Positions 1 to 31,995 of a stretch of 64,000 nucleotides of DNA are shown here, in pieces; positions within the stretch are counted from its first letter, which is position 1; the number at the start of each line of letters is the position of its first letter. A model generated the notes under the pieces. It did no database searches. It was given only the letters and a program-made list of their open reading frames with translations, and was not told the DNA's origin. The DNA comes from Corallochytrium limacisporum Hawaii (lineage: Eukaryota; Protista; Pluriformea), in contig PDIP01000063.1 of assembly GCA_002811645.1 (NCBI GenBank), positions 135,431-199,430 of the forward strand, given 5' to 3'. The position numbers and the translations under genes were made by a program.

Positions 1-1431
1 CATCCAGCCAGCGTAAGCCACGGCCGCATGCTGCTGCGGATGGTGACTGCCAGAGTCCTGCTGCTGGTGTGGTGCACCTGATGCGCCAGCCATTTGGCCG
101 GAGGTGTGCTGTTGTTGAGATGGATGCTGAGGATGTTGCTGTTGCGACGGATGCTGAGGATGTTGTTGCTGCTGTTGTTGATGACGATGATGCTCATGAT
201 GTTGGAGATGTTGATGAGAGGGATGATGATGTTGTTGCTGGTGGGGAGTGCCCTGCTTCAACGCCCCTTCAGAGGCTGCCTGCGCCTGCGGTGGTGGAGG
301 GTAGATGGATGGATTTGAGTGTCCGTGAACGCTGGTCAGGGAACTGACCAGCGCTAGCATGTCGTCTCCACCTTCGTCGTATGGATTGGACCAAATGCTC
401 GAGCCTGACTGGGCCGGTCCGGCACGGCTGCCCGGAGTGCCGTAAGCGGCGCCGGAGTGGCTGGTTTCCAGCTGGTCCAAGGATCCAAGTCGGTGAGATG
501 TCAGCGACGTCTGTGTGGAGGCACGCAGATCGGACGCGCTCTGCACGCCACTAATGGACGAAACAAAACTCGTGGTGGCAGACAGATCCATGGACCCGTG
601 GTGGTCGGTAGAGCGCACAGAGTGCATTGAACCGCGCATCTGCTCCGCACTCGCCGCTCCAGACAAGAGGCTTCCAACAGACTCGGCCGCGCCGAACTGT
701 GGGACGCGACCGGTGCTGCTTCGCTGGCTTGAAGAGCTGGCGCGGCGAATATCACTTGCAGTTGGGGCCGGCGCGGCAGTGGCTGCGGCTCCTGACCATT
801 CCATCTGAGGCAGATCAGTCCCTTCCATCGATGGACGGTGCGGTGTAATGGATGCACGACGCTGCGGACTGATGTGCTCTGGAGCAGGGGGTCTGGTTGC
901 CTGCCCGGCTTCGGAACTATAAGAAACTGAGGAGCTCGGATCGCTATGACGGGACACTTTCATGTTCGCCGCCGCTCCCTGAGCAGCCCACTGGCCAGCG
1001 TACATGGGATCCACGTTGGCCGGAGGGTCATTCATTGGACGAACGGGGCTGCTATTACTCTCTTCCATCTGCATAGCGGCAGCCGATGACGTTGCGCCGA
1101 CATCCTCGTAATTGAGGACTCCAGTCCGGCACAGGGCCTCTGCAGCATCAAGGTCAATGCCGGAGCCTCCAGCACTTGTGAACTCACTGCCCAAGATTCG
1201 GGCCAACTCTTCTTGACGGCGTTGCTGTAGTTTAATCTTCTCTGAAAATCGCCGGGGATTGTCCGGAGGACGTCGTCCCTTTCGCACTGCCTTCGGCTTC
1301 TCGCCTACGACAGCTCGATGGAGTCTGTTTTCCAATTCATTGATAAATTCTTGCGCACTCTGATTGGATTTGTCCTTGGGCTTGTCACCCGAAGCGCTTC
1401 CTCGCGATGTACCCTTACCCCGTCTTCCCAT
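1..1431 (-). CDS. CRTC/TORC-like CREB-regulated transcription coactivator, partial (3' end beyond left edge)
   Basis: Not in the ORF track because it has no stop in the window. Manual translation gives a stop-free frame from ATG 1431 (alternative in-frame ATG 1494) to position 1: MGRRGKGTSRG...PPDNPRRFSEKIKLQQRRQEELARIL..., then a Ser-rich region with RRAS sites and a Q/H-rich tract. NPRRFSEKIKLQQRRQEE (nt ~1207-1260) resembles the TORC_N motif NPRKFSEKIALQKQRQAEE. Confidence 0.7.
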   Translation of the reverse strand, partial: MGRRGKGTSRGSASGDKPKDKSNQSAQEFINELENRLHRAVVGEKPKAVRKGRRPPDNPRRFSEKIKLQQRRQEELARILGSEFTSAGGSGIDLDAAEALCRTGVLNYEDVGATSSAAAMQMEESNSSPVRPMNDPPANVDPMYAGQWAAQGAAANMKVSRHSDPSSSVSYSSEAGQATRPPAPEHISPQRRASITPHRPSMEGTDLPQMEWSGAAATAAPAPTASDIRRASSSSQRSSTGRVPQFGAAESVGSLLSGAASAEQMRGSMHSVRSTDHHGSMDLSATTSFVSSISGVQSASDLRASTQTSLTSHRLGSLDQLETSHSGAAYGTPGSRAGPAQSGSSIWSNPYDEGGDDMLALVSSLTSVHGHSNPSIYPPPPQAQAASEGALKQGTPHQQQHHHPSHQHLQHHEHHRHQQQQQQHPQHPSQQQHPQHPSQQQHTSGQMAGASGAPHQQQDSGSHHPQQHAAVAYAGWM

Positions 1432-2043
1432 AATCTTGGGAGAGGAGAATTCTAGTCTGTATCGATGACGGTCCACGCTTGCATACACGTCCATTCAACT
1501 TGTCTGTAATTGGTCTCCTTGAACGTAAACCAAGTGCTCTGTAGATATGGCTTGGATAAGGATCACGAGCTATGGTTCATTAATCGCCCTGGGGTTTCTT
1601 CTTTAGCTTTGGATACGGAATGTCCTTCCATATGGTTTTACATGAAATTGATCATGCGAGTCTGATATAGGACACCGTGTGATTCCTCAAATACCACAGA
1701 AACGAGTTCGAAAGAAAACCGCTATACAATGTTACGTCAGGGTCTAACGGCGAACGGTTTCCCATCGCGCAGAAAGGTTACTCGGTTCCAAAGCACCCAT
1801 CTCGAAGGTGAAGACGGGATAAGCACCGCAGCAACCCACGCAAACCCAGAACAGCGCTAGGAAAGAAGAACAGACGGGGGAAAGGGGTCATATCGGTTTC
1901 AAAATCAAATACACAAACAGCTCCAACCTCTGCACAAACTCCAGCGAGCAGCAGGGCGCAGCACACAGGCCCTCCCATATTATTGGTTGCGGATCAGAGG
2001 AGAAGGGAGCCGCGGGGGGGGGGAAGGAGAAAGGGAGAGGGGA

Positions 2044-2593
2044 NNNNNNNNNNNNNNNNNNNNNNNNNNNNNNNNNNNNNNNNNNNNNNNNNNNNNNNNN
2101 NNNNNNNNNNNNNNNNNNNNNNNNNNNNNNNNNNNNNNNNNNNNNNNNNNNNNNNNNNNNNNNNNNNNNNNNNNNNNNNNNNNNNNNNNNNNNNNNNNNN
2201 NNNNNNNNNNNNNNNNNNNNNNNNNNNNNNNNNNNNNNNNNNNNNNNNNNNNNNNNNNNNNNNNNNNNNNNNNNNNNNNNNNNNNNNNNNNNNNNNNNNN
2301 NNNNNNNNNNNNNNNNNNNNNNNNNNNNNNNNNNNNNNNNNNNNNNNNNNNNNNNNNNNNNNNNNNNNNNNNNNNNNNNNNNNNNNNNNNNNNNNNNNNN
2401 NNNNNNNNNNNNNNNNNNNNNNNNNNNNNNNNNNNNNNNNNNNNNNNNNNNNNNNNNNNNNNNNNNNNNNNNNNNNNNNNNNNNNNNNNNNNNNNNNNNN
2501 NNNNNNNNNNNNNNNNNNNNNNNNNNNNNNNNNNNNNNNNNNNNNNNNNNNNNNNNNNNNNNNNNNNNNNNNNNNNNNNNNNNNNNNNNNNNN
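2044..2593. other. Assembly gap (N run) flanked by G-rich polypurine tracts
   Basis: Ns in sequence, with G-runs on both sides. Confidence 0.99.
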
Positions 2594-5500
2594 GGGAAAG
2601 AGGGGGATTGGGAGGGGAGGGGAGGGGGGGGGCCTTGAACAGCATTACTTCCTTTTAGAGTTTATAGGGGGACTCTCTCCCTTTCAACATCGAGAGCATG
2701 ATCTTTCCCCCCCCCTCCGTTCCCGCAGGGGAGAGAGGGTGGCGGGGGACCCTTCACCTTCCCCCCTGAGCCTCTGCAGGTTCCCAACTCGACCAACCAG
2801 CGATCCAAGCTTTCCATCTCCATCCTTGCTCTGTCAGCCGAGGAGAAAGTAACTCGCTATGTTGTGTAAGATTATGTAAATGCATGGCCTGAGGAATGAT
2901 TTGGAGTGAGGGACACAAAGAAGTATTTTTTAACCGCGGGGGGCTGATGCCGAATGGTTGAGAGGGACGTGCAAAATCATAACGAGGCGCAAGCACTGGG
3001 TGAAGTATTCAAGACCACTATTAGCAGAAGAACGCTTTCTCGGCAGAGAGGGAAAGGGGAAAAGGGCCTCGCTCCAGACCAACCAATGACAGGCCAGCCT
3101 TTTCAAGACAGCTTTTAGAAAAGGGCATGAAATGAATGCATTCTCTCCCCCCGTTCTCTCAGGAGAGCGGTGATCCCGCACAAAGAAAAAACCTCTCGTA
3201 CGTTCTGCTTCGTCTTCTCCCAACTCCCATGAGATCGTATGATATATAGCGCCTGTGGATGCTCTAAGAATGCATCAATCATTTCAGCTGGATAGTAATA
3301 TACACACAGCTTCACTATCGTCCCAGTGCGTTTTATATGTGTGTCGTTTATCAGAAAGAGACAACCTTCAGGTACACAGGAACAGAGGCGATGGGCTCGC
3401 CTGACAAACACGTCCTTGAGAGCCTTTCGCGATTTCTCGTAACCTTGACGTGCAAATGAGGATCGAGCACCATAGAATCACAAAGAAAGGGAGAGTTGCT
3501 GTCGTTCTCTGGTTGCTGACCGTCGAATAGTGCGGGGTATTGATGCTTTTGCCGATGGTATCGAGAAATAAATAGGAAACCCCTCCAATCAAAACCCCCA
3601 GAAACCCACCAACGAGGAGACAAGAAAAAGCGGCAAACGACAGCAATCGAAGTGGGAAGACGAGCTGAAGGGAAAAGAGGGGGGGGGAACCCCTTTGTTG
3701 CATCCAACAAACACAGACAGGGACAGTGAGGAAGGTAAGGTCCAGTATATGGGGAATAAGTATGTGCTTCGGTTAACTTTGAAACCCAAAGCCGCTGGTG
3801 AGGCCAAAGGCTATATGGTGTTGGCGGAAAATGTCGTGTTTTGAAGTTGGTGTCTGTGTGTGGTTGTTGATGTTAGACGATGTCGTTTTTTGTCGATTGT
3901 CACATATGTGTCCCTCCTCACGGCACCACCATCATCGAGAGTCTTTTACAGGCCTTTAGATTTGGTTTGGGTTTGGGTTTTGTTGGCCAGGGTGGAGGCG
4001 TAAATCATATGACCTGATACGTGAGCCGTGGAAACGTCGCCGTCTGCTATACATTGTATATAATCGGATATGTCGTACGCGAGGGCGAAATGAAACAGAC
4101 AAATCCAACAAATAACCCTGATACCCAAACCATCATCATCATGCACCAACGAGAAGAATCGCATTGCGCAGGGGAATAAAATCACTATGTATTGACATGC
4201 AAGCACTATCACTACTACTACTTCACACTTACGACCATGTCGGTGTAATTTCAAACGAACACATTCCAGGGAGTATGGGCCCGGAGGCAACACACAAAGA
4301 AGTTGGACGACTCACTTCCGTCGTACGTCGGTGTACCGTTATTTTCACTTCGGCTCGCTCGCTCTCCGCGTTTCTGGCCGAACCCTTTCACCTCGCTGTG
4401 AACAGAGAGTTTCCCCTCTCTCTCTCTCCCTCTCTCTCCCCCTTCCTCATCCACTTGCCTCTCTCCGACAGGGGTCTCCACTACCAACTCCCATCCAAAG
4501 ACGAGCCAACAACGAAGAGAGTTGGGGGACAACGACATGTAGCAGCATAGCGGGGAGGTGGGGATGAGACGAGGAGAAGGACAGAGGAGAGAAGCAGAAC
4601 CACGCAACGCATCCGACCGAAACACAGAACCTGTCATTGCCTTGTAGGAACTAGTCGCGGATGCCTAGCACTCTCGAACTTCTCGTACATGGTAGGTGGA
4701 TGACTGTGCCTCGAGAGGCTCTCGTTAATTTATTCGGCTTGCGAAGATGAAGTCAGGGTCGGACGTTTCTTCTGCCGTTGTGCGGGTGTGGGCGAAGTTT
4801 GCAGCGTGCCGTATGTTTACTCGGCAGGAGTTTCTCCTTAATCCTCGGGTACTTGAAATGCCACGGCCGCCCAAAAATGGGCAGCGACGTGACCGTGGGT
4901 GGGAGTAATACCTGCGATTATATGCGCAAGTGTGTTGACGGTGCACACTCTACTCAGGTTACAGAAGCGAAAATTTTTGTCGTGAGCTCGGGAGCTGTTT
5001 TCGGAGAAAAATGTAATACCAGGGCCCCACGATTTCGTTTGCGGTTCTCACCGAACCCCAAGAGCATCCTATGATTCAGCCCTCTGCGCAATTTTTCTTC
5101 AACTTTGGCAGCCTAGCAGCCTTTGTCCGCCTCAAGACGGCATAAAAAAAGGGAGCGCACACCTCACCTACCAACCTCAAGTAATTCACACATTGAACAG
5201 GACCAAACTTAGATAGCGCAGAAAGGCAGATCATCTGCAGAAACAGAGGCGCAGAGCAGACGCGATAAGTAGCACCCAATCAGCACACCAAGCCGCCCAC
5301 GTCACAATCAGTCAAAGAAGTGTAACTGGCAGCCGAAGTGCTGAAAAAGATAGAACGGTCCAGCACATGTTCATGCCGAGTGTGGGGACGATCGATCGAG
5401 GGGAGGAAAATGTGTAAAGCGAGGACCATGTAAAATCCTACAAAATCAATGGAGCGGAAATCACTCAAAAAATGATAATTGAACACCCAATCTCGTCCTT

Positions 5501-16196: not shown

Positions 16197-19100
16197 ATGC
16201 CGCCTCAAGGATCTGTAGCATTGAGCGGGACAGTGGAGGGTGCCCACAGCGAGGTTGCGCTAAAGTACTGGAAGGAAAAGTTGGCAGATGTAGCCTACTT
16301 GCAGCTGCCGTCGGATTATCCCCGGCCCACACAGGACCAAATCGTCGAGGCCAGTGAGAGCCATGCTCCAAGCGATGACGTCTGCAAGAAGCTGCTCAAG
16401 TACGCGCTCATGCGGGACTTAAAGCCATTCACGGTATGCATGTCAGCTTTTCTAGTGCTGTTGCACAAATACACTCGAGAAGAAGACATTGTTGTGGGTT
16501 CTTCTGCATCCAACTTCAACCCTCTCCTGATCCGCATGGCGGTCAAGGATGCCAGCCCTCTCAGCGAGATCCTAGCTTCGGTTGCACAGATCGAGCAAGA
16601 AGCTTATGACAATGATGTGCCATTTGACATCCTTGTCAAGGAGTTGACTGTTGGTGATGGCTCACAGAATTTATCGGGACTTTTCCAGGCCCGCTTTTTT
16701 AACGTGACAGATGTCAGCCAAGAGACTCTCGACATTGCAAACGCCTCTTGGACTATATATGTCGAGCAAATGAGCGATAGTAAGCGTCTGCTACCACTGA
16801 ACTTTAAAGTTATCTACAACAGTCTACTTTTTGCTAGGGAGCGCATGACTGAGGTGTTGAAGCAGTTGGAGATGGTAATCGATGCCATCGTAAGCGACAA
16901 CGAAGGCAAGGTTCTCGTTCAGGACGTCTGCATTAGAACAGATGAAAGTAGGGCCTATCTGCCGGACCCTTCCGGCAATCTATCGGACTTCTTCCAAGGA
17001 AGCATTTCTGAAATTATGCACCGTAACGCGGAATTGTATCCCGACCGGGCGTGCGTCGTGGAGAACGACAAATCATGGGACTACGCTCACATGGACGCTG
17101 AGAGCAATCGATTAGCCAACTATCTGCTTTCCAAGGGTGTACAGAAGGAGGACGTGGTGGCCCTGTATGCCCACCGCAGTGCTGCAATTGTCATTGGTAT
17201 CATGGGTATACTAAAGGCTGGTTGTACTTTCACCGTAATCGATCCGCAGTACCCTACTGAGCGCCAGACTATTTATCTGTCTGTGGCTAAGCCCCGTGTT
17301 ATAATTGAGATATCTCGAGCCGGTCGCATCAGTCAGGAGGTAAAGGACTACATCGTAAAGGAACTCAATGTCGTGGCCCACCTCGAGAGCCTCCACCCAG
17401 ATCAGATCATTGATGAGGAGTTGAAAGCCTGTCCCACTACTTACCCAAACGTCGTGGTTGGCCCTAACAACATTGGCACTCTCTCTTTCACATCGGGTTC
17501 CACAGGTATTCCAAAGGGTGTGCGTGGTCGTCATATTTCTCTGACCCACTTCTACCCTTGGATGTCTGAAGAGTTTGGAATCGGCAAAAACGATCGCTTT
17601 ACCATGCTCAGTGGAATTGCTCACGATCCCATTCAACGTGATGTGTTCACTCCTTTGTTTTTTGGTGCTTCCATTCACATTCCGGAATTTGAGGACATAA
17701 TGACCCCGGGTCGTCTGGCCAAGTGGATGCAGGAAAGCGGCTCCACGGTCACACATTTAACCCCCGCCATGGGTCAGCTGCTAACCGCCAACGCCACGGA
17801 GCAGATGCCCGCTCTCAAGAACGCCTTTTTCGTGGGTGACGTGCTAACCAAACGGGATACTCAGAAATTGCAGTCTCTAGCTCCCAATGTTACGGTGATC
17901 AATATGTACGGTACTACCGAGACCCAGCGTGCGGTGAGCTACTACAAGGTGACTCCCGATGCTCCCATTGATTTTTACAAGGACATCATCCCGGCTGGAC
18001 GTGGAATGAAGGACGTGCAGATTCTGGTTCTTTCGGACAACAAGATGCTGACAGGTGTTGGTGAATTGGGAGAGTTGTACACCCGATCACCGCATTTGAG
18101 TGCGGGATACCTCCGCCTGCCTGATGCCACGGCAGAGAAGTTCTTGCCGAACCCTTTCAAGTCGCTTCCAGAAGGTGGCGATCAGATGATGGACCGACTG
18201 TATCGCACCGGTGATTTGGGACGCTACATGGCGGATGGTTCTGTGGAGTGCATTGGTCGTGCTGACTTCCAGGTGAAGATCCGTGGCTTCCGTATTGAAC
18301 TGGGTGAAATTGACACGTATTTAACCCAGCACCCAGATGTGAGCGAAAATGTAACTCTCGTCCGTCGTGATGCTAACGAGGAGAAGATGATTGTTAGCTA
18401 TATCGTACCTGCACGTGAAGACTGGGATGAGGTCAGCGTGCGAGACTGGCTCAAGTCCAAACTCCCCGCCTATGCAGTGCCAACAATTATCGCACCACTG
18501 AGCCGGATGCCTCTGACTCCAAATGGTAAAATCGATCGCGCTAAATTGCCCTTCCCTGAGGCTGCGATGGCTGCTTTAGCCTCTCAGTCCCAAGCAGGCC
18601 CCAGTGAGGACATGACCCCGATGCAGCGCAAGATCCACGAAGTCTGGGTCAATGTCCTAAAGCGCCCCGTACGTCTCACGGACAACTTCTTTGACATCGG
18701 TGGCCATTCTATCCTTGCTACACAGCTGACCTTCCAGCTGCGTACCATATTGCGATCTGAAATGCCCCTCAACCTGCTATACTCCTTCCCCACTATCGAA
18801 GGATTGGCTGCAGAAATAGAGAAGAGCAGCAACGATCCTGAGGCTCTTGTCTTTAAGTCATCTCGGGATAATACGGAGTCCGTATCTATGGCCGATGAGG
18901 TTAAAGAACTAGTGGATGATGAGATCAAGGGTAATCCAGAAGGTGCCTTCAAAGCAGAACCCAATGGCATTTTCCTCACCGGTGCTACTGGTTTCCTGGG
19001 TGCGTTCATGCTGAACATGCTCCTGAAGGCCCATCCCAATACCACTGTCTTTTGTCTAGTCCGCGCAAAGAACAAACAGGCTGGCTTCGACCGTCTAAGT

Positions 19101-20141
19101 AAGAACTTGAAGGCACATCTACAATGGGAAGATTCCTTTTCTGATCGCTTGTCAGCTGTGATTGGGAACCTTACCTCTCCCTTGCTTGGTCTGGAGGAAT
19201 CAGAATTTAACGCTCTTGCGGAGAAGTGCGACGTGGTCATCCATAACGGTGCCATGGTCCACTGGGTCTATCCCTACTCCAAGCTTAAGCCCATGAACGT
19301 AGTAGGTACTAGGGAGGCTCTGCGCCTTGCTGCGCGTCACCATACTAAGCCCTTCCACTTTATTAGTTCAACGTCTGTCCTCGATGCTCCCAAGTATATG
19401 CAGATGACCGAAGGAGTGCTGGAGAGCACAAATCTGGTTCCTAGTGAGGACCTCACCGTAGGCTACGGTCAAAGCAAGTGGATTGCCGAGGCAATCACAC
19501 TGGAGGCCAACCGCCGTGGCATCCCCAGCACTATTTTCCGCCCTGGCTACATCGTCGGACACTCAAAGACTGGCGTAATGAATCTGGACGACTTCCTTGT
19601 GCGCCTGCTAAAGGGTTGCCTGCAGCTTGGAAAGGCACCTATCATGGAGAACACTGTCAACATGTGCCCTGTCGACTACATTTCCGCGGCCATTGTCGAG
19701 GCCACCAAACACGCCGACGCCTTGGGCAAGGCTTACCATATGGCCAACCCCAATGCATTCCGCTTTAACGACTATTTCCAATGCCTGAACAAATATGGAT
19801 ACGATGTGAAACATGTCGAATATCGTGAATGGCGTGATGAACTCTTCAAGGTCACAACTAGTGCAGATGATCACGTCCTATACCCGTTGTTGCATTTTGT
19901 CTTGGACGATTTGCCGAACAAATCAAAGTCGCCCAAGCTGGATACAACGAATATGGATGCACTCGTACGGAAGGGTAACATTGAATGCCCCGCAATGGAA
20001 AACATGTTAGGTATCTATCTAGCATATTTCGTGGCAATTGGATATATGCCCCAGCCTACTAATGCGGATGCGAAGAGCTTGCCTGAGCTTGATATCCCCG
20101 CTGACGTTGTTGCAGTGCAGCGCAGTGATCGTAAGTTGTGA
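16197..20141 (+). CDS. LYS2: L-2-aminoadipate reductase (NRPS-like: truncated C/ADA, A, PCP and thioester reductase domains)
   Basis: 1314 aa. A-domain motifs TLSFTSGSTGIPKGV, NMYGTTE, YRTGDLGRY, QVKIRGFRIELGEI; Lys2-typical SGIAHDPIQRD; PCP motif FFDIGGHSILA; reductase motifs FLTGATGFLG and GYGQSKW. Confidence 0.95.
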   Translation: MPPQGSVALSGTVEGAHSEVALKYWKEKLADVAYLQLPSDYPRPTQDQIVEASESHAPSDDVCKKLLKYALMRDLKPFTVCMSAFLVLLHKYTREEDIVVGSSASNFNPLLIRMAVKDASPLSEILASVAQIEQEAYDNDVPFDILVKELTVGDGSQNLSGLFQARFFNVTDVSQETLDIANASWTIYVEQMSDSKRLLPLNFKVIYNSLLFARERMTEVLKQLEMVIDAIVSDNEGKVLVQDVCIRTDESRAYLPDPSGNLSDFFQGSISEIMHRNAELYPDRACVVENDKSWDYAHMDAESNRLANYLLSKGVQKEDVVALYAHRSAAIVIGIMGILKAGCTFTVIDPQYPTERQTIYLSVAKPRVIIEISRAGRISQEVKDYIVKELNVVAHLESLHPDQIIDEELKACPTTYPNVVVGPNNIGTLSFTSGSTGIPKGVRGRHISLTHFYPWMSEEFGIGKNDRFTMLSGIAHDPIQRDVFTPLFFGASIHIPEFEDIMTPGRLAKWMQESGSTVTHLTPAMGQLLTANATEQMPALKNAFFVGDVLTKRDTQKLQSLAPNVTVINMYGTTETQRAVSYYKVTPDAPIDFYKDIIPAGRGMKDVQILVLSDNKMLTGVGELGELYTRSPHLSAGYLRLPDATAEKFLPNPFKSLPEGGDQMMDRLYRTGDLGRYMADGSVECIGRADFQVKIRGFRIELGEIDTYLTQHPDVSENVTLVRRDANEEKMIVSYIVPAREDWDEVSVRDWLKSKLPAYAVPTIIAPLSRMPLTPNGKIDRAKLPFPEAAMAALASQSQAGPSEDMTPMQRKIHEVWVNVLKRPVRLTDNFFDIGGHSILATQLTFQLRTILRSEMPLNLLYSFPTIEGLAAEIEKSSNDPEALVFKSSRDNTESVSMADEVKELVDDEIKGNPEGAFKAEPNGIFLTGATGFLGAFMLNMLLKAHPNTTVFCLVRAKNKQAGFDRLSKNLKAHLQWEDSFSDRLSAVIGNLTSPLLGLEESEFNALAEKCDVVIHNGAMVHWVYPYSKLKPMNVVGTREALRLAARHHTKPFHFISSTSVLDAPKYMQMTEGVLESTNLVPSEDLTVGYGQSKWIAEAITLEANRRGIPSTIFRPGYIVGHSKTGVMNLDDFLVRLLKGCLQLGKAPIMENTVNMCPVDYISAAIVEATKHADALGKAYHMANPNAFRFNDYFQCLNKYGYDVKHVEYREWRDELFKVTTSADDHVLYPLLHFVLDDLPNKSKSPKLDTTNMDALVRKGNIECPAMENMLGIYLAYFVAIGYMPQPTNADAKSLPELDIPADVVAVQRSDRKL

Positions 20142-25260: not shown

Positions 25261-28200
25261 ATGAGAGGAATCCACTCCTATCCGCACTGCGAGCTTCTGC
25301 GGGAGTTTGGAGTCTTCCAGGGCGGCGGACGTAATGGAGTTCGGACCTATGATGCAAAAGGAAATGTTAGGGTTGCATTTGATCTCGACTTACGGTCGTA
25401 TATCTTGGATATTAGGGGTGCCACATCCAGTACTTCGTATTTTGGCTTACCCAAGTCAAGAAGCCAATCGTTGAACGTGAAGGCCCCGCTGCTGTATATT
25501 ATTCTCACACCAGGACCAGCAGGATCAGCCCCAATGTTTGCACTCCATCTGGAGATGTATCTGGCGCGGGGTCAAAGAGTCAAGGTATCCGTTAGTAACT
25601 TGTTTCGCACTCTGCGCGTCACCCCTTCCTTTGCAGAGTTCCCGTACTCTGGCCCAATGGGAGAATGGATTTTCTTTGCCATTTCATTACCAGACCTTGT
25701 ACAGCAGTATTTCCCTGGAGGGCAGTACCAGAGCCTGCGAAGTATCCGCCTGAATTGTAATTGCCTAGTCCGCAGTATCTACACAAGTCATGTCTCATAC
25801 ACTCTGCGGAACCTGCCAAAGGAATCGTGTTTACCAGTGTCTTACCTGGATCACAACGACGTACCTATGGTCTACCTTCCAGACAGGTTGGAAATGGATC
25901 TGGAAGAAGGTGTGGAGGAGGGTCTCGTCATTGACGAAAACATAGAGAATGCTGACGACACAGCCACGGCTTCGATGTTCGATGGGCAGTCAGAGATTAG
26001 ACCACAGAACTCTCCTCGGGTGATGGCGCACTCAGTCAACAGTGCCAACCCTGCCATAGGCACCACAAGAGATGTTTCCGTTGTGTCGGCCTCTACCTTG
26101 CCGCAGGTAGGAATATCTGGGTCGCGAGAGGTCCGTCGGGCAACCAACACAGGGCACAGGCGAAGCCCATTAAAGGAACGCGTGAACAACATGGGAAACC
26201 AATCCACGCCGCTGAACAAGAACAACTCTAAACAGCAAGCAGATGTTGCCGGTAGTGTCCGCAAGCAAACATTTCAGGGGCCCAATATCCTCCGACTCTG
26301 TAACGCCTTTGGCGTCAGCCACACTAGCCGCCCGGCGGCGTCTTTGGTCATTGCTCCGGGTAACGATTCCGTGGCATATGTATCCGAGAATGTAGTTGTT
26401 ATCTCTAAAATTCATACTGACTTTCTGCGGGGTCAGGCAGGGATTCTCAAGCAGAGGTTTCTGCAGGGACATCGTGACACGGTAACGGCCTTCTGCAGCA
26501 ATTCCAGGGCGAATCTTTGGGCAACTGCGTGCGGCAATGCTTCTGTTGCCAAACGCATGGAACCGTCTTCAAAAATGGAAACAAAGGGGATGGAAACGAC
26601 AAAAATTGTGAGGGTGTCAGTATGGGACGATGTTGAGATAGGGCAGCGCAGGCTAAGCTCCTGGGTTATGGATGGTTGGCGATGTGTGACGAATCTTGAA
26701 TTTGCCTTCGACGGCACACTACTGCATATCGTAGGCCAAGATTCCCGTGGTGGCGATGCTTACGAAGTCTGGGAACTCAGCAATGTCCGGAAAAAGATTG
26801 TTTTTGCCATGGCCAAGGCCACCAGTAGCCCAAGTGGCTCAGCACTTATTGATGGGGGGTCTCTGCGCTGCCTCAAAGCATTTCCGGGAGACCGCACCCG
26901 TTCACTGAGCTGTGGAACGCACTCCATCAAACGTTGGCGCATCCGCACTGGACCCTACAACGTTCCACCAAGCCACTCGTCGTCAAGTTCGGGTGTCAAT
27001 GCTCTAGTTAAACAGTCCACTGTGCTCAACGATTTGCGCAGCTACGCAGTGAGCATACCGAAACACATGAACACTTGGAAATTTGTAGATATAGCCTTCC
27101 CTGATGTCACAGAAGAGAGCAACAAGGATAGCTCGGCCTCAGTCAACAGGACCGGTGTGCCGTCACGTGCTTTGGTGAGCTGCGAGAACGGCTGTGTGGT
27201 GGTAGTGTCACTCGCATCATTGGTTGCGGAGTTCGTAGTGCACCTTCACAACCTCGGACGGGATGGTACCGTGGTCTTCAGTCCTACCCGCACTAAATGT
27301 ACCATTAACTCCATAGCCATCCGTGGACCCTATACCATCACAGGGGCAGAAGACGGGCTACTGCGCATTTGGGACACTCAATCCTTGCTCAAAACTGTCG
27401 GACCGGATAGAAGTACCCCTGTTAACCTGGAAGGGGGTCACGAAGAGAGTCGTGTTGGGTCAGCCGAGAACAGCACCTCTGCTGAATTGCTTTTCGAGGC
27501 CGAACACGAGGCCGAGGTCAGTAGTGTACAGCCTCTACTAGCGGTGGACGTGGACAGGTCCCAAGCTGTAGACGCGAATATTGATGCTCCTGCTGTGGTC
27601 CTCACCAAGAGCGGAAATTTGGGCGTGCTAGAATTGAGTCAACCAGCGTATCTGCTGGCCATGACTTCACCTGCAGGAGTGATCCGACAGATCCTCCCGC
27701 TCCCAAAGCGGACGAAGCTGGCTGTGCTGGATGCCACTTACAAGGTGGCTCTTTGGGATATGGTGGAAAATCGACAAAGCGTAGAATTGCTACCGCCCAC
27801 GGTACACAGTTTAGACACTAGAAGAGCCGAAGTGGACCCTGTCACCGCGCTAGGTTCGGACACTGACGAATCACTCCTCTTTGTGGGCCATCGGAGTGGA
27901 CGTTTGCGCATCTTTGACATGTACACGACATCTATGCTCAATGACTTCGTCGTACGGGAGGCTACGGACCTGGACACCGCTTTTTCTTTCGCCACGGCCA
28001 TTACTTCCATCGCTGCCCATCCGCAGACCGACTGTGTCTATGTGGCCTGTGCTAATGGCAGCATTAGCCTCCACCTGGCCTCCCGCGATTACGAACAGAT
28101 TGACATGATCTACGATGCGCTGCAGGGCCAGGACCTCCATATCACAGTCCCTCATCCATCGCAGTGGCCGACGTTTATGATGGTCCCAGACAATGTTATG

Positions 28201-31200
28201 GCCAGGACAGAGCCGACCACGGGCTATTGTCCGCTACTGTACGTGAACGCAGCAGGTACTGGCATCTGTGTGTGTGATTCCTTGCGTCTGAAACTGAAAG
28301 CAGTGCTGGAATGGCAGAATACGGCCCGGATCCTTGGTTTCAAGGTCGCCAGTGCACCGGAAGGCAGTCCTCCGGCCATACTTCGATCACAGCGACTGAT
28401 GAACTACACTGGAGCCGAAGATGACGACGAAGGTTTAGAGGATGCTCGAATGACAACTGAAGGGCCAATTTTGGTGGTTCATTTGGCTGATCGTCGCTTC
28501 CATATCATTTCAATGGACCTGGATCAGCACGGCGCTGCCGGCGGTGGCCGAATCATTGCGCCCGAGACCCGCTTACTCTCCAGCATCTACGATCCGAGCC
28601 TATCCCTTCGCAGCCACTTCGATGTCTTCAACCACTGCGGGATGACCTTTATTGTTGCGACCATGACTAGCGGTGCCATCAGAGTCTGGTGGGCCGGGCG
28701 TGACGACGCCCTCCCACAGACTTTGTTCGCACACAGCCGCTCTTTTACTTCTTCTGCGCCTAGCGGCGAGCTTGTTAGTTCTCCTTGCGTGAGCATGTTT
28801 CGCGATCCAGAGACCGGAGCGACACGCTTGGTGACCGGACTGCATTCAATGTTCGTATGGCATCTCGCGGACGTGAGTACGGAAGTGGAGAAACATTTGG
28901 ATGGGGGAGACACCGATGATACCTCCCAGGTGTCAGGTCTCGACGTGACCGCGGAACGCAGCGTGCTTGGAGCTGATAAATCGGTGGCGGAGCTGGCCAC
29001 CCTGCGCGTTTTGGGCTCTGCCGAAGCCTTGCCCTCCAAGCAGCGCCAGACATACAAGGCGGTGGCCTCGGCGAGGCAGTACCATCCAGATGAGTTTAAG
29101 GCTGGCGACATTGCGGATGATGAGGGTGCGTTCCCATCGGATAGAATCGCGGTCGACCGTGACTGCATGCATGACTTGCGCGAACTGAGAAGTTTAGTGG
29201 CCGATTTACCCCTGGCGGACGAACGCTCTACGCGCTTTCGGAGCAGGGGTGAATCCAAAGTTCGCAACTCAGGAAATGCAGCCGATCGCAAACCCATCCT
29301 ACATGGTGTTGAAATGGAGAAGGACCGTGCCTGGAATGATGGCCAGGTCGCCAGTATAGGAGTGATGGTGGCCTCAGGCCAGCTGGGTAGGAACATCCGT
29401 GGCTTTCCCGCACCCATGCACTGTTGGAATCAGTCTACTGGTCTCTTTGCCTACGCCAGCGGCAGTCAGTGCGTGGTGGAGGACCTGACAAGTCGGCATC
29501 AGACCATCGTCAATGACCATACTGTACCGATCAACAATCTAGTGGCCTCCTCGTGTGGACAGTACATGGCCACTGCCTCCCCACAGACCAATCAGAGCAG
29601 CTGTCAGGTGCGGGTCTATCGCAGTGCGGATATGCGATGCTTGCACTCCTTTGTATACCACCGTAATTACGTGTCATGCATGGCCTTCAGCAATCCCATG
29701 AAGAAACAGCTGCAGAATCAGCGTCAGGGAACCGGCAGAGACGAAGACTATACTGACGATGACGAGCACTTTCGTAGTGGTGGTGATGAGCTTGACGCCG
29801 AAGTGCGCCATATCATGGCCAGGCACCGCAACAATGCCGAAAGAACGCGCCAACACCCGGCCGCTTGCATTCAACAACAGTATTTGGTCACTTTCGGTGA
29901 CCTAGAGGAGCCGCTGCTGTCCCTTTGGCGTATTTTTGAAGGCGACGATAATGAGTCAACCGAGCTGCTAGATCCTGCCATCTTGCACGTACAAAAGCAG
30001 GCAGAAGGCAGCTCTACAGGTGGACACTTGTGCTCGGTCATGCTTAAGTCTGACGACGCCATCTCCGCAGTCGCATGGCATCCTATCCGTGGCAATGACT
30101 TTGTCTCCTGCAGCAGCAAAGGAGTAACATTGTGGACCTTCAACGCACCCGACTTGCACTACCGCGAGAATCTGCAGCAAGAACCCAGGAAAGCTCTGCA
30201 TGACCCTGTGACATTGAAAAGAGTGTGGACCTTGGCGAGCCAATCTCAGTCCTTGCCCTGCCTCCCCACTTCGCTTCGCTACCTGGATCCAGCTGGTGTA
30301 TTTCTTGTCGTTGGTGGCAGCGATGGCTGTCTCCACGTTTACGACTCTCTGCTGCAAGAGCAACGAATTGGTCGCCACGATGAGGACCTACCAGACGAAG
30401 GCCAATCAGACGCCCCAGAGCCCTACACAACTGACCTAGACAACGATGTATTGATGCCTGTCAAAATCGCTACGTATTCTGTGGAGGAGAGTGCAGTGCG
30501 CATGATTCTGTGCGCCACTCTGCCGATGTGTGCGTCCGATGGCGATTCGCAGGTGACGCGTGATTCTACGCATCCTTCTTTTGCAGTGGTGACGGCTGGT
30601 GATGATACGCGCGTTCACCGCTGGCTGCTAGAAGGTATCCACTCCCTCAGGCGCTCTGTCGCAACTACACTCGGCCGGTTCGAGGCTGAGCATGGGCTGC
30701 CAGACCCAGACACATCGCTGCACCAGGTTCTGGCTCCAACCGCTTATAATGTCAGCGCCTTGTTGTCCTTTGGAGAATTGCAACTCGACGGTGCAGTGTC
30801 GCATGGAGACCAAGATGACGTATCCTTCCTATCAGTCATCGGCACTGATCGGGGCAGTCTCTGGTACGTACACTGGGAAGAGAATGAAATGGCGAGGCTA
30901 GTTAGCTCACACCAAGGGCCGATCCTCGATTGTACCGTAATGGAGACCGATGGACCGGGTGTGGGCTTTGCGGCCTCTGCCGGAGAGGATGGCACTGTAC
31001 GTCTTTGGGATCTATCCACCCTAGACCAGACCCTCATGTTTGAGGTCAAGGGTTATGCTGCCACTGCCATTGCAATCGCACCACCGGTGACTCGTGGGGC
31101 CGGTCTTCGTCAGCTTTCGGCTGGCTACAGTGATGGGTCAGTGCGGATCATTGATATGACACGCACCCAGCTCTTCGCCCGACTGCACCCGTTCCCGATT

Positions 31201-31995
31201 TTGGAATCTCCGCTGGAAGAACATTCCCTCGACCAGCGCTCCAACGCTGTTACTGCTCTTCACTATGTCGGCAACGGGCAAACACTAATTGCAGGCAGCA
31301 AGAGCGGCCATTTGGCCGTGATAAGTGCCACTTCTGGCATCACTCTCTCCCTGCTGTCTGATCACGCCGGCAGCCCCATCACTTCCCTGGCGGGCGCAAA
31401 GTACGTGCCGCCCTCAAAAAGTCTCGGTGTCAGTCGCCACAGGACTAGAGACGAGGGTGCAACGTCTGGCCTACCTCAGGATCTCTGGACTGCGGCGTCC
31501 CAGGATCGTCGTGTCAGTGTCTGGCAGCCTGTGAGCGGAGACATGGGCACTCATGAAAAGGAACACACGAATACTGAACCGTTCATTTTAAGCCATTGGT
31601 TCAGTTTCCCCGGATTGCCTAAGGACGAGGCAAGGGGCATCCCCTCTCTTGTCGCCCTGCCTGCCGATCGACCCGGGCACCTACTCTTCACTGGTTCCAC
31701 AACAGCAGTCGAAGCCACAGAGTACGCTATTGCCACCCAGCAGCGCATTCGCACCCATGAATTGACGCATCGTGCACAGTGCTGGGACTTCCATGCCGTT
31801 CCAGCCGGCGAGAGGGACTCAACAGTTGTTTTAGGAGCCACAGATCGCGCAGTGTCATCTATGAGTCTGCGCACTGGCGAACGTCGGGACTTTTTGGCAC
31901 ACTGTACCGCCGTGGCCTCGGTCTGTGTATACGACGAAGGACGGAAGGCTTTGAGTGCTGGCGCCGACGGCATTAAGGTGTGGTCTCTGACTTGA
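25261..31995 (+). CDS. WDR90: WD repeat-containing protein 90 (POC16; CFAP20/DUF667-like N-terminal domain + WD40 repeats)
   Basis: 2244 aa. N-terminus IRGATSSTSYFGLPKSRSQSLNV...LYI...FALHLE...VSVSNLFR..R.T....FP matches WDR90. Many WD repeats (ITGAEDGLLRIWD, SAGEDGTVRLWD, GYSDGSVRI, ASQDRRVSVW). Confidence 0.85.
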   Translation: MRGIHSYPHCELLREFGVFQGGGRNGVRTYDAKGNVRVAFDLDLRSYILDIRGATSSTSYFGLPKSRSQSLNVKAPLLYIILTPGPAGSAPMFALHLEMYLARGQRVKVSVSNLFRTLRVTPSFAEFPYSGPMGEWIFFAISLPDLVQQYFPGGQYQSLRSIRLNCNCLVRSIYTSHVSYTLRNLPKESCLPVSYLDHNDVPMVYLPDRLEMDLEEGVEEGLVIDENIENADDTATASMFDGQSEIRPQNSPRVMAHSVNSANPAIGTTRDVSVVSASTLPQVGISGSREVRRATNTGHRRSPLKERVNNMGNQSTPLNKNNSKQQADVAGSVRKQTFQGPNILRLCNAFGVSHTSRPAASLVIAPGNDSVAYVSENVVVISKIHTDFLRGQAGILKQRFLQGHRDTVTAFCSNSRANLWATACGNASVAKRMEPSSKMETKGMETTKIVRVSVWDDVEIGQRRLSSWVMDGWRCVTNLEFAFDGTLLHIVGQDSRGGDAYEVWELSNVRKKIVFAMAKATSSPSGSALIDGGSLRCLKAFPGDRTRSLSCGTHSIKRWRIRTGPYNVPPSHSSSSSGVNALVKQSTVLNDLRSYAVSIPKHMNTWKFVDIAFPDVTEESNKDSSASVNRTGVPSRALVSCENGCVVVVSLASLVAEFVVHLHNLGRDGTVVFSPTRTKCTINSIAIRGPYTITGAEDGLLRIWDTQSLLKTVGPDRSTPVNLEGGHEESRVGSAENSTSAELLFEAEHEAEVSSVQPLLAVDVDRSQAVDANIDAPAVVLTKSGNLGVLELSQPAYLLAMTSPAGVIRQILPLPKRTKLAVLDATYKVALWDMVENRQSVELLPPTVHSLDTRRAEVDPVTALGSDTDESLLFVGHRSGRLRIFDMYTTSMLNDFVVREATDLDTAFSFATAITSIAAHPQTDCVYVACANGSISLHLASRDYEQIDMIYDALQGQDLHITVPHPSQWPTFMMVPDNVMARTEPTTGYCPLLYVNAAGTGICVCDSLRLKLKAVLEWQNTARILGFKVASAPEGSPPAILRSQRLMNYTGAEDDDEGLEDARMTTEGPILVVHLADRRFHIISMDLDQHGAAGGGRIIAPETRLLSSIYDPSLSLRSHFDVFNHCGMTFIVATMTSGAIRVWWAGRDDALPQTLFAHSRSFTSSAPSGELVSSPCVSMFRDPETGATRLVTGLHSMFVWHLADVSTEVEKHLDGGDTDDTSQVSGLDVTAERSVLGADKSVAELATLRVLGSAEALPSKQRQTYKAVASARQYHPDEFKAGDIADDEGAFPSDRIAVDRDCMHDLRELRSLVADLPLADERSTRFRSRGESKVRNSGNAADRKPILHGVEMEKDRAWNDGQVASIGVMVASGQLGRNIRGFPAPMHCWNQSTGLFAYASGSQCVVEDLTSRHQTIVNDHTVPINNLVASSCGQYMATASPQTNQSSCQVRVYRSADMRCLHSFVYHRNYVSCMAFSNPMKKQLQNQRQGTGRDEDYTDDDEHFRSGGDELDAEVRHIMARHRNNAERTRQHPAACIQQQYLVTFGDLEEPLLSLWRIFEGDDNESTELLDPAILHVQKQAEGSSTGGHLCSVMLKSDDAISAVAWHPIRGNDFVSCSSKGVTLWTFNAPDLHYRENLQQEPRKALHDPVTLKRVWTLASQSQSLPCLPTSLRYLDPAGVFLVVGGSDGCLHVYDSLLQEQRIGRHDEDLPDEGQSDAPEPYTTDLDNDVLMPVKIATYSVEESAVRMILCATLPMCASDGDSQVTRDSTHPSFAVVTAGDDTRVHRWLLEGIHSLRRSVATTLGRFEAEHGLPDPDTSLHQVLAPTAYNVSALLSFGELQLDGAVSHGDQDDVSFLSVIGTDRGSLWYVHWEENEMARLVSSHQGPILDCTVMETDGPGVGFAASAGEDGTVRLWDLSTLDQTLMFEVKGYAATAIAIAPPVTRGAGLRQLSAGYSDGSVRIIDMTRTQLFARLHPFPILESPLEEHSLDQRSNAVTALHYVGNGQTLIAGSKSGHLAVISATSGITLSLLSDHAGSPITSLAGAKYVPPSKSLGVSRHRTRDEGATSGLPQDLWTAASQDRRVSVWQPVSGDMGTHEKEHTNTEPFILSHWFSFPGLPKDEARGIPSLVALPADRPGHLLFTGSTTAVEATEYAIATQQRIRTHELTHRAQCWDFHAVPAGERDSTVVLGATDRAVSSMSLRTGERRDFLAHCTAVASVCVYDEGRKALSAGADGIKVWSLT

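What the first reader, a model, noticed from the sequence alone, without database searches (positions are those of the whole stretch)
1..1431. Hidden CRTC/TORC-like CREB coactivator in an apparently non-animal genome
Seen: a stop-free minus-strand ORF of at least 477 codons, missed by the ORF track, contains NPRRFSEKIKLQQRRQEE at aa 58-75. It continues into Ser-rich disordered sequence with basophilic kinase sites (RRASI, RRASSSS) and a Q/H-rich tract. Known: the CREB-bZIP-binding TORC_N helix of animal CRTCs reads NPRKFSEKIALQKQRQAEE (CRTC2), about 13 of 18 residues identical by eye, and CRTCs are controlled by SIK/AMPK phosphorylation and calcineurin. Inference: LYS2 and the intronless neighbours argue for a unicellular host, so a CREB-CRTC signalling module would predate animals. 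The motif also sits behind a basic 57-aa extension.
Basis: partly seen in the sequence, partly recalled or inferred. Interest (0 to 1): 0.8.

Follow-up and report, generated by a model that had tools for sequence, protein, structure and literature searches.

The report
CRTC-like CREB-binding helix in Corallochytrium
A single-celled relative of animals expresses a mostly disordered protein whose N-terminal helix closely resembles the part of animal CRTC coactivators that clamps onto the transcription factor CREB, and the same genome has a matching CREB, so this gene-switch pair may be older than animals, though the match is short and unproven.

Summary
Observation confirmed. Window 1431..1 (-) is a stop-free ORF that ends 36 nt past the window edge (488 aa; gene model 509 aa). 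Residues 58-75 match the start of the animal CRTC CREB-binding domain in 13 of 18 positions.

The genome is Corallochytrium limacisporum, a unicellular holozoan. The gene is real: an unspliced ~2.2 kb transcript-like contig, and 4 synonymous to 1 non-synonymous strain differences.

For the CRTC reading:
- The Pfam TORC_N hit is below threshold (20.4 bits, cut-off 25; 18 of 63 positions) but is the only candidate in the 24 Mb genome.
- CRTC2 is the top PDB match, improving from E 0.03 to 7e-4 with a two-sequence profile.
- A marine-metagenome relative conserves an ~80-aa block around the motif.
- AlphaFold predicts a helix at residues 59-85, which equals CRTC2 19-45.
- The DNA-contact pair and leading Phe (R60, R61, F62) are kept.
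- The genome encodes a KID-less CREB-class bZIP that keeps the Arg314 equivalent.

Against it: no TORC_M or TORC_C, no canonical SIK/AMPK, 14-3-3 or calcineurin motifs, and no bridging homologues.

Verdict: partly supported. It is probably (~0.55) a divergent CRTC-type CREB-binding coactivator, with SIK/calcineurin control unsupported.

The parts
1..1494 (-). Coding sequence of the CRTC-like protein. The ATG at 1431 gives 488 aa and the ATG at 1494 gives the 509-aa model P0001. The last 11 codons and the stop lie 36 nt beyond the window's left edge.
   Evidence: strain differences 4 synonymous: 1 non-synonymous, no indels in the CDS
1..1625 (-). Part of the unspliced ~2.2 kb transcript that lies in the window. 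The whole transcript is L001 911-3125, i.e. window -589 to 1625, with a 3'UTR of about 554 nt outside the window.
   Evidence: one 2218-nt contig with no joints; flanks L001 1-450 and 3151-4500 uncovered
1117..1356 (-). Conserved N-terminal block (aa 26-105), shared at 58% identity with the marine metagenome protein P0002.
1306..1371 (-). Predicted helix 1 (aa 21-42), conserved in P0002 and absent from animal CRTCs.
1264..1299 (-). Basic patch KPKAVRKGRRPP (aa 45-56). VRKGRRPP is invariant in P0002. Possibly an NLS or extra DNA contacts (inference).
1207..1260 (-). TORC_N-like motif NPRRFSEKIKLQQRRQEE (aa 58-75). R60, R61 and F62 align with CRTC2 R20, K21 and F22.
   Evidence: PMC13571231
1177..1257 (-). 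Predicted amphipathic helix 2 (aa 59-85), equal to CRTC2 19-45 at an ungapped +40 offset. Hydrophobic stripe F62, I66, L76, L80, F84.
847..861 (-). RRASI, a PKA-type basophilic site (aa 191-195).
727..747 (-). RRASSSS, a PKA-type basophilic site (aa 229-235).
469..495 (-). HRLGSLDQL (aa 313-321), the only partial AMPK-family-like site (R at -3, L at +1 and +4). It loosely resembles the CRTC GGSLPDL variant site. P about 0.05 against shuffles.
   Evidence: PMC5325614
337..381 (-). Acidic-hydrophobic patch YDEGGDDMLALVSSL (aa 351-365), a candidate activation motif (inference).
28..243 (-). Q/H-rich low-complexity tail (aa ~397-468), a candidate glutamine-rich activation region (inference).

Best explanation
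The gene encodes a nuclear, largely disordered transcriptional coactivator of Corallochytrium limacisporum. Its N-terminal module is helix 1, a basic patch, then a 27-residue amphipathic helix (aa 59-85), and this module is a divergent CRTC-type CREB-binding domain. Proposed mechanism: the helix lies along the leucine zipper of the KID-less CREB-class bZIP Clim_evm26s147, whose Arg314 equivalent is retained. R60 and R61 (plus perhaps the preceding basic patch) touch the CRE DNA backbone. The acidic-hydrophobic patch and Q/H-rich tail recruit the transcription machinery. The Ser-rich middle, with RRxS sites, is the likely regulatory region, controlled by PKA-type or other basophilic kinases and not by the animal SIK/14-3-3/calcineurin circuit. 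Shown here: the gene, its transcript, sequence constraint, motif specificity, the predicted helix, and the existence of the CREB partner. Inferred: homology with CRTC, CREB/DNA binding, coactivation and phospho-regulation.
For: TORC_N is the only Pfam family hit (E 8.7e-4), and this locus is the only TORC_N candidate in the genome (23.7 bits, E 0.0019). The top three PDB matches are all CRTC2 CBD chains (E 0.03). A profile built with the metagenomic homologue improves this to E 7e-4, with the next non-CRTC chain at 0.066. P0002 alone also picks TORC_N (E 0.037) and ranks CRTC2 first in the PDB (E 0.1). The motif is the best-conserved part of an ~80-aa block shared with P0002. AF2 predicts a helix at aa 59-85 in two independent runs. 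That equals CRTC2 19-45, the reported functional helix, with R20/K21 as DNA contacts and the helix running from F22 to M45 (PMC13571231). The hydrophobic stripe is continuous. The module is N-terminal and followed by a long disordered region, as in CRTCs (PMC5325614). The CREB-class bZIP has CREB1 as best PDB hit at E 8e-12 against ATF2 at 1e-4. It is 65% identical over the bZIP to a bZIP+pKID CREB and keeps R314, the CRTC-recruiting residue (PMC11773003). CREB is reported in non-animal holozoans without a KID (PMC4736632). The gene is expressed and constrained. The empirical null gave one loose chance match in 596 Gb.
Against: The match is below Pfam's gathering score and covers only 18 of 63 profile positions. 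Beyond CRTC2 residue ~37 there is no detectable sequence similarity. No TORC_M or TORC_C exists. There are no canonical SIK/AMPK, RxxSxP, PxIxIT or LxVP motifs. No intermediate homologues were found in 1.84e9 representatives at E<=0.001, or by word search at E<=10. The protein atlas gave nothing. The motif was spotted by eye in a very large scan, so a look-elsewhere penalty applies. The extra N-terminal helix and basic patch have no CRTC counterpart. No binding evidence of any kind exists.
Confidence: 0.55

Rival explanations
1. This is a lineage-restricted disordered protein, found in Corallochytrium and one marine-metagenome relative, whose conserved basic-patch-plus-helix block does something else, such as nuclear import, nucleic-acid binding or another protein partner. 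It resembles the first ~18 residues of the CRTC CBD by chance or by convergence of a short charged helix.
For: The hit is sub-threshold (20.4 against 25 bits) and covers 29% of TORC_N. There is no TORC_M or TORC_C and no CRTC regulatory motifs. No bridging homologues were found. P0002 alone gives only E 0.037 (Pfam) and E 0.1 (PDB), with Nup62 at 0.13. Helix 1 and the basic patch are absent from CRTCs. K/E/Q/R-rich helices are common.
Against: The most specific part, N-P-R-basic-F-S/A-E-K-I-x-L-Q-x-x-R-Q, is not low-complexity (HMMER bias 0.0-0.2). It is unique in the genome. In its strict form it never occurs in 596 Gb of prokaryotic DNA. It sits at the N-terminus of a helix whose predicted length matches the CRTC2 helix. 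It occurs in the lineage closest to animals, in a genome with a CREB that keeps R314.
Confidence: 0.38
2. This is a true full-length CRTC orthologue regulated as in animals: SIK/AMPK phosphorylation, 14-3-3 retention and calcineurin release.
For: A 14-3-3 gene and at least 9 KA1-domain (MARK/AMPK-related) kinases exist in the genome. One partial site, HRLGSLDQL, is present. The middle region is Ser-rich.
Against: No TORC_M or TORC_C. There are zero full AMPK-family consensus sites, zero RxxS/TxP, zero PxIxIT and zero LxVP. 14-3-3 and AMPK-related kinases are generic to eukaryotes and so uninformative. Nothing outside the N-terminal block is conserved with P0002.
Confidence: 0.05
3. This is not a real gene, or it is animal DNA contaminating the assembly.
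For: None beyond the fact that the ORF runs off the window and is compositionally biased.
Against: The transcript-like contigs are sharply bounded and come from two studies. Strain differences are 4:1 synonymous to non-synonymous, with indels confined to the UTR. The block is conserved in P0002. The gene lies on a 265-kb contig beside LYS2-type and other intron-poor genes. An EukProt gene model exists. The genome-wide TORC_N, TORC_M and TORC_C pattern is unlike any animal.
Confidence: 0.02

Closest known systems
Animal CRTC/TORC coactivators (CRTC1-3, Drosophila CRTC, C. elegans CRTC-1); Pfam TORC_N PF12884; structures 4HTM, 5ZK1, 5ZKO
   Same: The N-terminal motif N-P-R-basic-F-S-E-K-I-x-L-Q-x-x-R-Q has 13 of 18 identities with CRTC2. 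The basic pair and Phe are at the positions that contact DNA and start the CREB-binding helix. The predicted helix has the same length and register (aa 59-85 = CRTC2 19-45). A long Ser-rich disordered region follows, then an acidic and Q-rich C-terminal part. A CREB-class bZIP partner with the Arg314 equivalent is in the same genome.
   Different: The match is below Pfam's gathering score. Only the first ~20 residues of the CBD are similar. The motif is preceded by a conserved extra helix and basic patch (57 to 78 aa) instead of sitting at the extreme N-terminus. There is no TORC_M (no S171- or S275-type SIK/14-3-3 sites, no calcineurin docking) and no TORC_C activation domain. The basophilic sites are PKA-type RRxS. 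The protein is shorter (488-509 aa) and comes from a unicellular non-animal.
GOS marine metagenome protein P0002 (231-aa fragment, unnamed)
   Same: It is the only detectable homologue: 58-63% identity over the ~80-aa helix 1, basic patch and helix 2 block, with the CRTC-like motif almost invariant.
   Different: Nothing is shared outside the block. The contig is ~42% GC and its organism is unknown. It is N-terminally truncated, and its protein ends about 140 aa after the motif.
CREB/CBP (KID-KIX) activation route
   Same: Both routes are ways of giving CREB an activation function. CBP/p300 with KIX is reported in unicellular holozoans (PMC5560861).
   Different: The Corallochytrium CREB (164 aa) has no pKID, so the KID-KIX route is not evident. 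A bZIP-binding coactivator would be an alternative route.

Membership tests
CRTC/TORC (Pfam TORC_N/TORC_M/TORC_C) | TORC_N (CREB-binding domain) profile match above the curated gathering score | tested here: not met
   20.4 bits (protein) and 23.7 bits (six-frame) against a cut-off of 25; profile positions 1-18 of 63 only. The hit is specific (sole family hit, sole genomic candidate) but sub-threshold.
CRTC/TORC | N-terminal helix with the basic DNA-contact pair followed by Phe (CRTC2 R20, K21, F22-M45) | tested here: met
   R60, R61 and F62 align without gaps. AF2 predicts a helix at aa 59-85 in two runs. The hydrophobic stripe is F62/I66/L76/L80/F84. Reference residues come from PMC13571231.
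CRTC/TORC | Central regulatory domain (TORC_M) with SIK/AMPK-family sites that double as 14-3-3 sites (LxBS/TxSxxxL; RxxS/TxP) | tested here: not met
   No TORC_M in the genome. There are 0 full AMPK-family consensus sites and 0 RxxS/TxP; only one partial site, HRLGSLDQL. Motif definitions come from PMC5325614.
CRTC/TORC | Calcineurin docking motif (PxIxIT or LxVP type) | tested here: not met
   0 PxIxIT and 0 LxVP matches.
CRTC/TORC | C-terminal transactivation domain (TORC_C) | tested here: not met
   No TORC_C hit at E<=10 in the protein or the genome. The transcript has no further exons. An acidic-hydrophobic patch and a Q/H tail exist, but their function is only inferred.
CRTC/TORC | A CREB-family bZIP partner with the CRTC-recruiting arginine (human R314) | tested here: met
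   Clim_evm26s147 has CREB1 as best PDB hit (E 8e-12), and CLEDRV aligns to CLENRV. It is 65% identical to a bZIP+pKID CREB. The role of R314 is from PMC11773003.
CRTC/TORC | Physical binding to the CREB bZIP on CRE DNA, and coactivation | not testable with these tools
   The structure tool folds single chains only. No experimental data are available.

The most novel reading that the evidence does not exclude
The CREB-CRTC partnership arose before animals, in the holozoan stem. Its ancestral form was a minimal coactivator: a bZIP- and DNA-clamping N-terminal helix fused to a disordered activation tail. That coactivator supplied the activation function to a KID-less CREB and was controlled through PKA-type RRxS sites. 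The SIK/14-3-3/calcineurin switch (TORC_M), the TORC_C activation domain and the CREB KID would then be later animal additions.
Probability: 0.3. Interest if true: 0.7.

Novelty: new variant of a known kind. Interest (0 to 1): 0.55.

Why it matters
CRTCs are treated as animal coactivators that couple cAMP, calcium and energy signals to CREB. I found no paper in the searchable library that reports one outside animals. CREB without a KID domain is already known in unicellular holozoans, which leaves open how such a CREB activates transcription. A CRTC-type helix in Corallochytrium would supply a candidate answer. It would add CREB-CRTC to the list of animal regulatory modules that predate multicellularity, and it would suggest an order of assembly: the binding helix first, the kinase/14-3-3/calcineurin switch later. 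The idea is directly testable with short recombinant fragments.

Tried and rejected
1. Word-index protein searches on the N-terminal region (E<=0.01) and on the block alone (E<=10) returned only the protein itself. No profile-profile (hhalign) test against a metazoan CRTC alignment could therefore be run.
2. The protein atlas gave no usable hit, on aa 1-130 or on aa 50-100 with named clusters only.
3. The metagenome scan with the A1 alignment and a second scan with a degenerate DNA motif both returned nothing. The second scan should have recovered the GOS contig, so that collection does not hold it and the blanks mean little.
4. TORC_M, TORC_C and pKID genome scans gave none, or only a 20.5-bit fragment in a 24-aa frame.
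5. I considered a hidden 3' exon carrying TORC_C. I rejected it because the transcript contig has no joints and ends about 554 nt after the stop.
6. P0003 and P0004 from the exhaustive search match aa 79-116 in 7-8 repeated stretches of long proteins. I treated them as repeat or low-complexity hits and did not pursue them.
7. The one prokaryotic motif hit (L016, a gut-derived Bacteroidales MAG) was checked only over 52 codons, to decide whether it was host DNA. It reads NPRQFAEKIILQ with no CRTC continuation, so I judged it a chance bacterial match and not human, and did not use it further.
8. A GGS stretch after the helix (aa 88-90) resembles the CRTC site I GGSLPNV. I rejected it because it is not conserved in P0002.
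9. CRE palindromes in the window: 1 found, 1.1 expected.
10. A SIK-specific search was not done, because no SIK-specific family model or referenced query was available.

Full report
THE OBSERVATION. Translating window 1-1431 on the minus strand gives 477 stop-free codons starting MGRRGK. I fetched the neighbouring DNA of the same 265-kb contig and joined it in a script. The frame closes 36 nt beyond the window edge, giving 488 aa. An in-frame ATG 21 codons upstream (window 1494) gives 509 aa, and that is exactly the database gene model P0001, whose source is EukProt. The ORF list omits ORFs that run off the source, which is why the ORF track missed it. NPRRFSEKIKLQQRRQEE is at aa 58-75, window 1207-1260. 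RRASI, RRASSSS, the Ser-rich middle and the Q/H tail are all as described.

THE ORGANISM. The assembly is 24.1 Mb in 286 contigs. Earlier notes of this scan call it Corallochytrium limacisporum. I checked this in two ways. The published Corallochytrium assembly is 24.1 Mb (PMC5560861). The source's own name for a gene of this genome is Clim_evm26s147. The window also carries a single-ORF LYS2-type alpha-aminoadipate reductase (16197-20141) and several long uninterrupted eukaryotic genes, including RhoGEF, TRM1 and LeuRS. The host is therefore a unicellular holozoan and not an animal.

IS IT A REAL GENE? Contigs of two small public runs from two studies cover only L001 911-3125, which is window -589 to 1625. 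One contig of 2218 nt has no joints, and the flanks (L001 1-450 and 3151-4500) are empty. The runs are only guessed to be RNA, but sharply bounded coverage with empty flanks is what an mRNA gives and what genomic DNA does not. The second run is a different strain or allele. In the CDS it has 4 synonymous changes, 1 non-synonymous change (S444P, in the Q/H tail) and no indels. In the 554-nt 3'UTR it has 3 substitutions and 4 indels. The gene is thus expressed, unspliced and under coding constraint, and it has no hidden 3' exon.

HOW SPECIFIC IS THE CRTC RESEMBLANCE? Pfam gives one family only, TORC_N, at E 8.7e-4 and 20.4 bits. That is below the gathering score of 25, and it covers profile positions 1-18 of 63. 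A six-frame scan of the whole genome with TORC_N finds this locus as the only candidate (23.7 bits, E 0.0019). TORC_M and TORC_C find nothing. Against all PDB sequences, the three best matches are the three CRTC2 CREB-binding-domain chains (5ZK1_C, 4HTM_A, 5ZKO_G; E 0.03), aligned without gaps with 13 of 18 identities. As an empirical null, I scanned 596 Gb of bacterial and archaeal genomes with a degenerate DNA pattern for N-P-R-x-F-[SA]-E-K-I-x-L-Q. It hit once, at NPRQFAEKIILQ in a Bacteroidales MAG, with no basic residue at position 4 and no CRTC-like continuation. I looked at that contig only far enough to decide that it is a bacterial chance match and not host DNA.

RELATIVES. An exhaustive HMMER search of 1.84e9 representatives with aa 1-130 found one real relative, P0002. 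It is a 231-aa N-terminally truncated protein on a 1.3-kb Global Ocean Sampling contig (E 1e-14). The two proteins share an ~80-aa block at 58% identity (ORF aa 26-105) and nothing else. Within the block, the stretch VRKGRRPP-x-NPRRF-x-EKIKLQQ-x-RQE-x-LA-x-IL-x-SEF is almost invariant. P0002 on its own also picks TORC_N (15.2 bits, E 0.037) and ranks CRTC2 first in the PDB, but not significantly (E 0.1, with Nup62 at 0.13). A profile of both sequences raises the CRTC2 match to E 7e-4 (22.6 bits), with the best non-CRTC chain at 0.066. The improvement is modest and in the direction expected for true remote homology. No bridging sequences were found. Because the large searches cannot list matches of about 20 bits, this is no evidence of absence in other holozoans. 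It also meant that I could not obtain animal CRTC sequences by reference, so a profile-profile comparison could not be run.

STRUCTURE. AlphaFold2 on the two-sequence alignment (mean pLDDT 67, up to 87 in the helix) predicts helix 1 (aa 21-42), an unstructured basic linker, helix 2 (aa 59-85) and a short helix 3. The single-sequence full-length model reproduces helix 2 (aa 59-86) and gives no confident structure after about aa 160. With the ungapped +40 offset, aa 59-85 equals CRTC2 19-45. A 2026 paper that summarises the 5ZKO structure states that CRTC2 Arg20 and Lys21 contact DNA, that Phe22-Met45 form the helix binding the CREB bZIP, and that alanine scanning maps function to residues 19-45 (PMC13571231). 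Here the corresponding residues are R60, R61 and F62. The helix has a continuous hydrophobic stripe: F62, I66, L76, L80, F84. From my own memory of the CRTC2 sequence beyond residue 39, which no tool output confirms, L80 and F84 would fall on F40 and M44.

THE PARTNER. The genome has at least 7 bZIP genes above the Pfam threshold. One of them, Clim_evm26s147 (164 aa), has CREB1 as its best PDB match (E 8e-12, against ATF-2 at 1e-4). It carries the CREB signature KKKEYVKCLE-D-RV, which retains the arginine equivalent to human R314. The R314A mutation abolishes CRTC recruitment (PMC11773003). Its closest non-self relative in 5.8e9 proteins carries bZIP plus pKID and is 65% identical over the bZIP. 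The Corallochytrium protein has no pKID, in line with the literature on KID-less CREB in unicellular holozoans (PMC4736632; PMC5560861). A second, weaker CREB-like bZIP exists at L006.

WHAT IS NOT THERE. The features that make animal CRTCs signal-regulated are absent. There is no TORC_M and no full AMPK-family consensus site. There is no RxxS/TxP 14-3-3 site and no PxIxIT or LxVP calcineurin site (motif definitions from PMC5325614). The only partial site is HRLGSLDQL (aa 313-321). RRxS (PKA-type) is enriched at 3 against 0.37 expected, and one copy lies inside the motif itself as RRFS. A 14-3-3 gene and at least nine KA1-domain kinases exist, but these are generic eukaryotic components. A SIK-specific search was not possible with the tools.

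INTERPRETATION. The most likely reading (about 0.55) is a divergent CRTC-type CREB-binding coactivator: the helix clamps the CREB zipper and the DNA, and the acidic-hydrophobic patch (aa 351-365) and Q/H tail activate transcription. Regulation, if any, would run through RRxS sites and not through the SIK/14-3-3/calcineurin switch. The main rival (about 0.38) is a lineage-restricted disordered protein whose conserved helix resembles the CBD start by chance or convergence. A full animal-style CRTC (about 0.05) and an artefact or contaminant (about 0.02) are unlikely. Because three defining features were tested and not met (TORC_N above threshold, TORC_M, TORC_C), I do not file it as a family member in the Pfam sense. 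I describe it as a CRTC-like CBD-bearing protein that probably works like the CBD end of a CRTC.

NOVELTY. Searches of the paper library found no report of CRTC/TORC outside animals, and the two main holozoan gene-content papers do not mention it. If the reading is true, this extends CREB-CRTC to the holozoan stem and suggests that the binding helix predates the regulatory switch.

LIMITS. Everything on function is inferred. The homology claim rests on about 20 residues plus context: lineage, partner, position in the protein, helix length and conservation.

Noticed in passing
L006 (G000:C261:183861-187010), open frame 1387-2154 (-): A second CREB-like bZIP (CREB1 is the best PDB hit, E 1e-5). 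It has a poly-Q/poly-P N-terminal region and an RRSIS site about 25 aa upstream of the basic region, and it also keeps an Arg at the R314-equivalent position (VERRV). It could be an alternative partner.
   Followed up: partly
G000 genome-wide; L017-L020: At least nine genes with a KA1 domain (MARK/AMPK-related kinase type) in a 24 Mb genome. This looks like a sizeable expansion for a unicellular organism.
   Followed up: no
window 2001-4000: GC drops to 36.6% against about 50% elsewhere, just upstream of the gene, with overlapping open frames on both strands at 1980-2852. No tandem repeats were found. Its nature was not determined.
   Followed up: partly
window 25261-31995 (+): An uninterrupted 2244-aa ORF, not examined.
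   Followed up: no
window 49579-51300 (-): A 573-aa ORF with no Pfam family at E<=1e-5.
   Followed up: no
L014 (G000:C111:226752-226796 +): The only pKID-like match in the genome: 20.5 bits (cut-off 25), in a 24-aa open frame. Probably noise, but it could be a small exon.
   Followed up: no
L001 911-3125: Run X2 differs from the assembly by 8 substitutions and 4 small indels over 2.2 kb, so a second strain or allele of the organism exists in public data.
   Followed up: partly
L016 6582-6617 (-), Bacteroidales MAG contig CAAGNU010000034.1: A chance occurrence of NPRQFAEKIILQ in a bacterial frame. It was the only hit of the degenerate motif in 596 Gb of prokaryotic genomes.
   Followed up: yes
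Metagenome-contig collection: The GOS contig that encodes P0002 fits the DNA pattern searched but was not returned. That collection therefore does not contain (or withholds) the record that the look-up of encoding contigs served.
   Followed up: no
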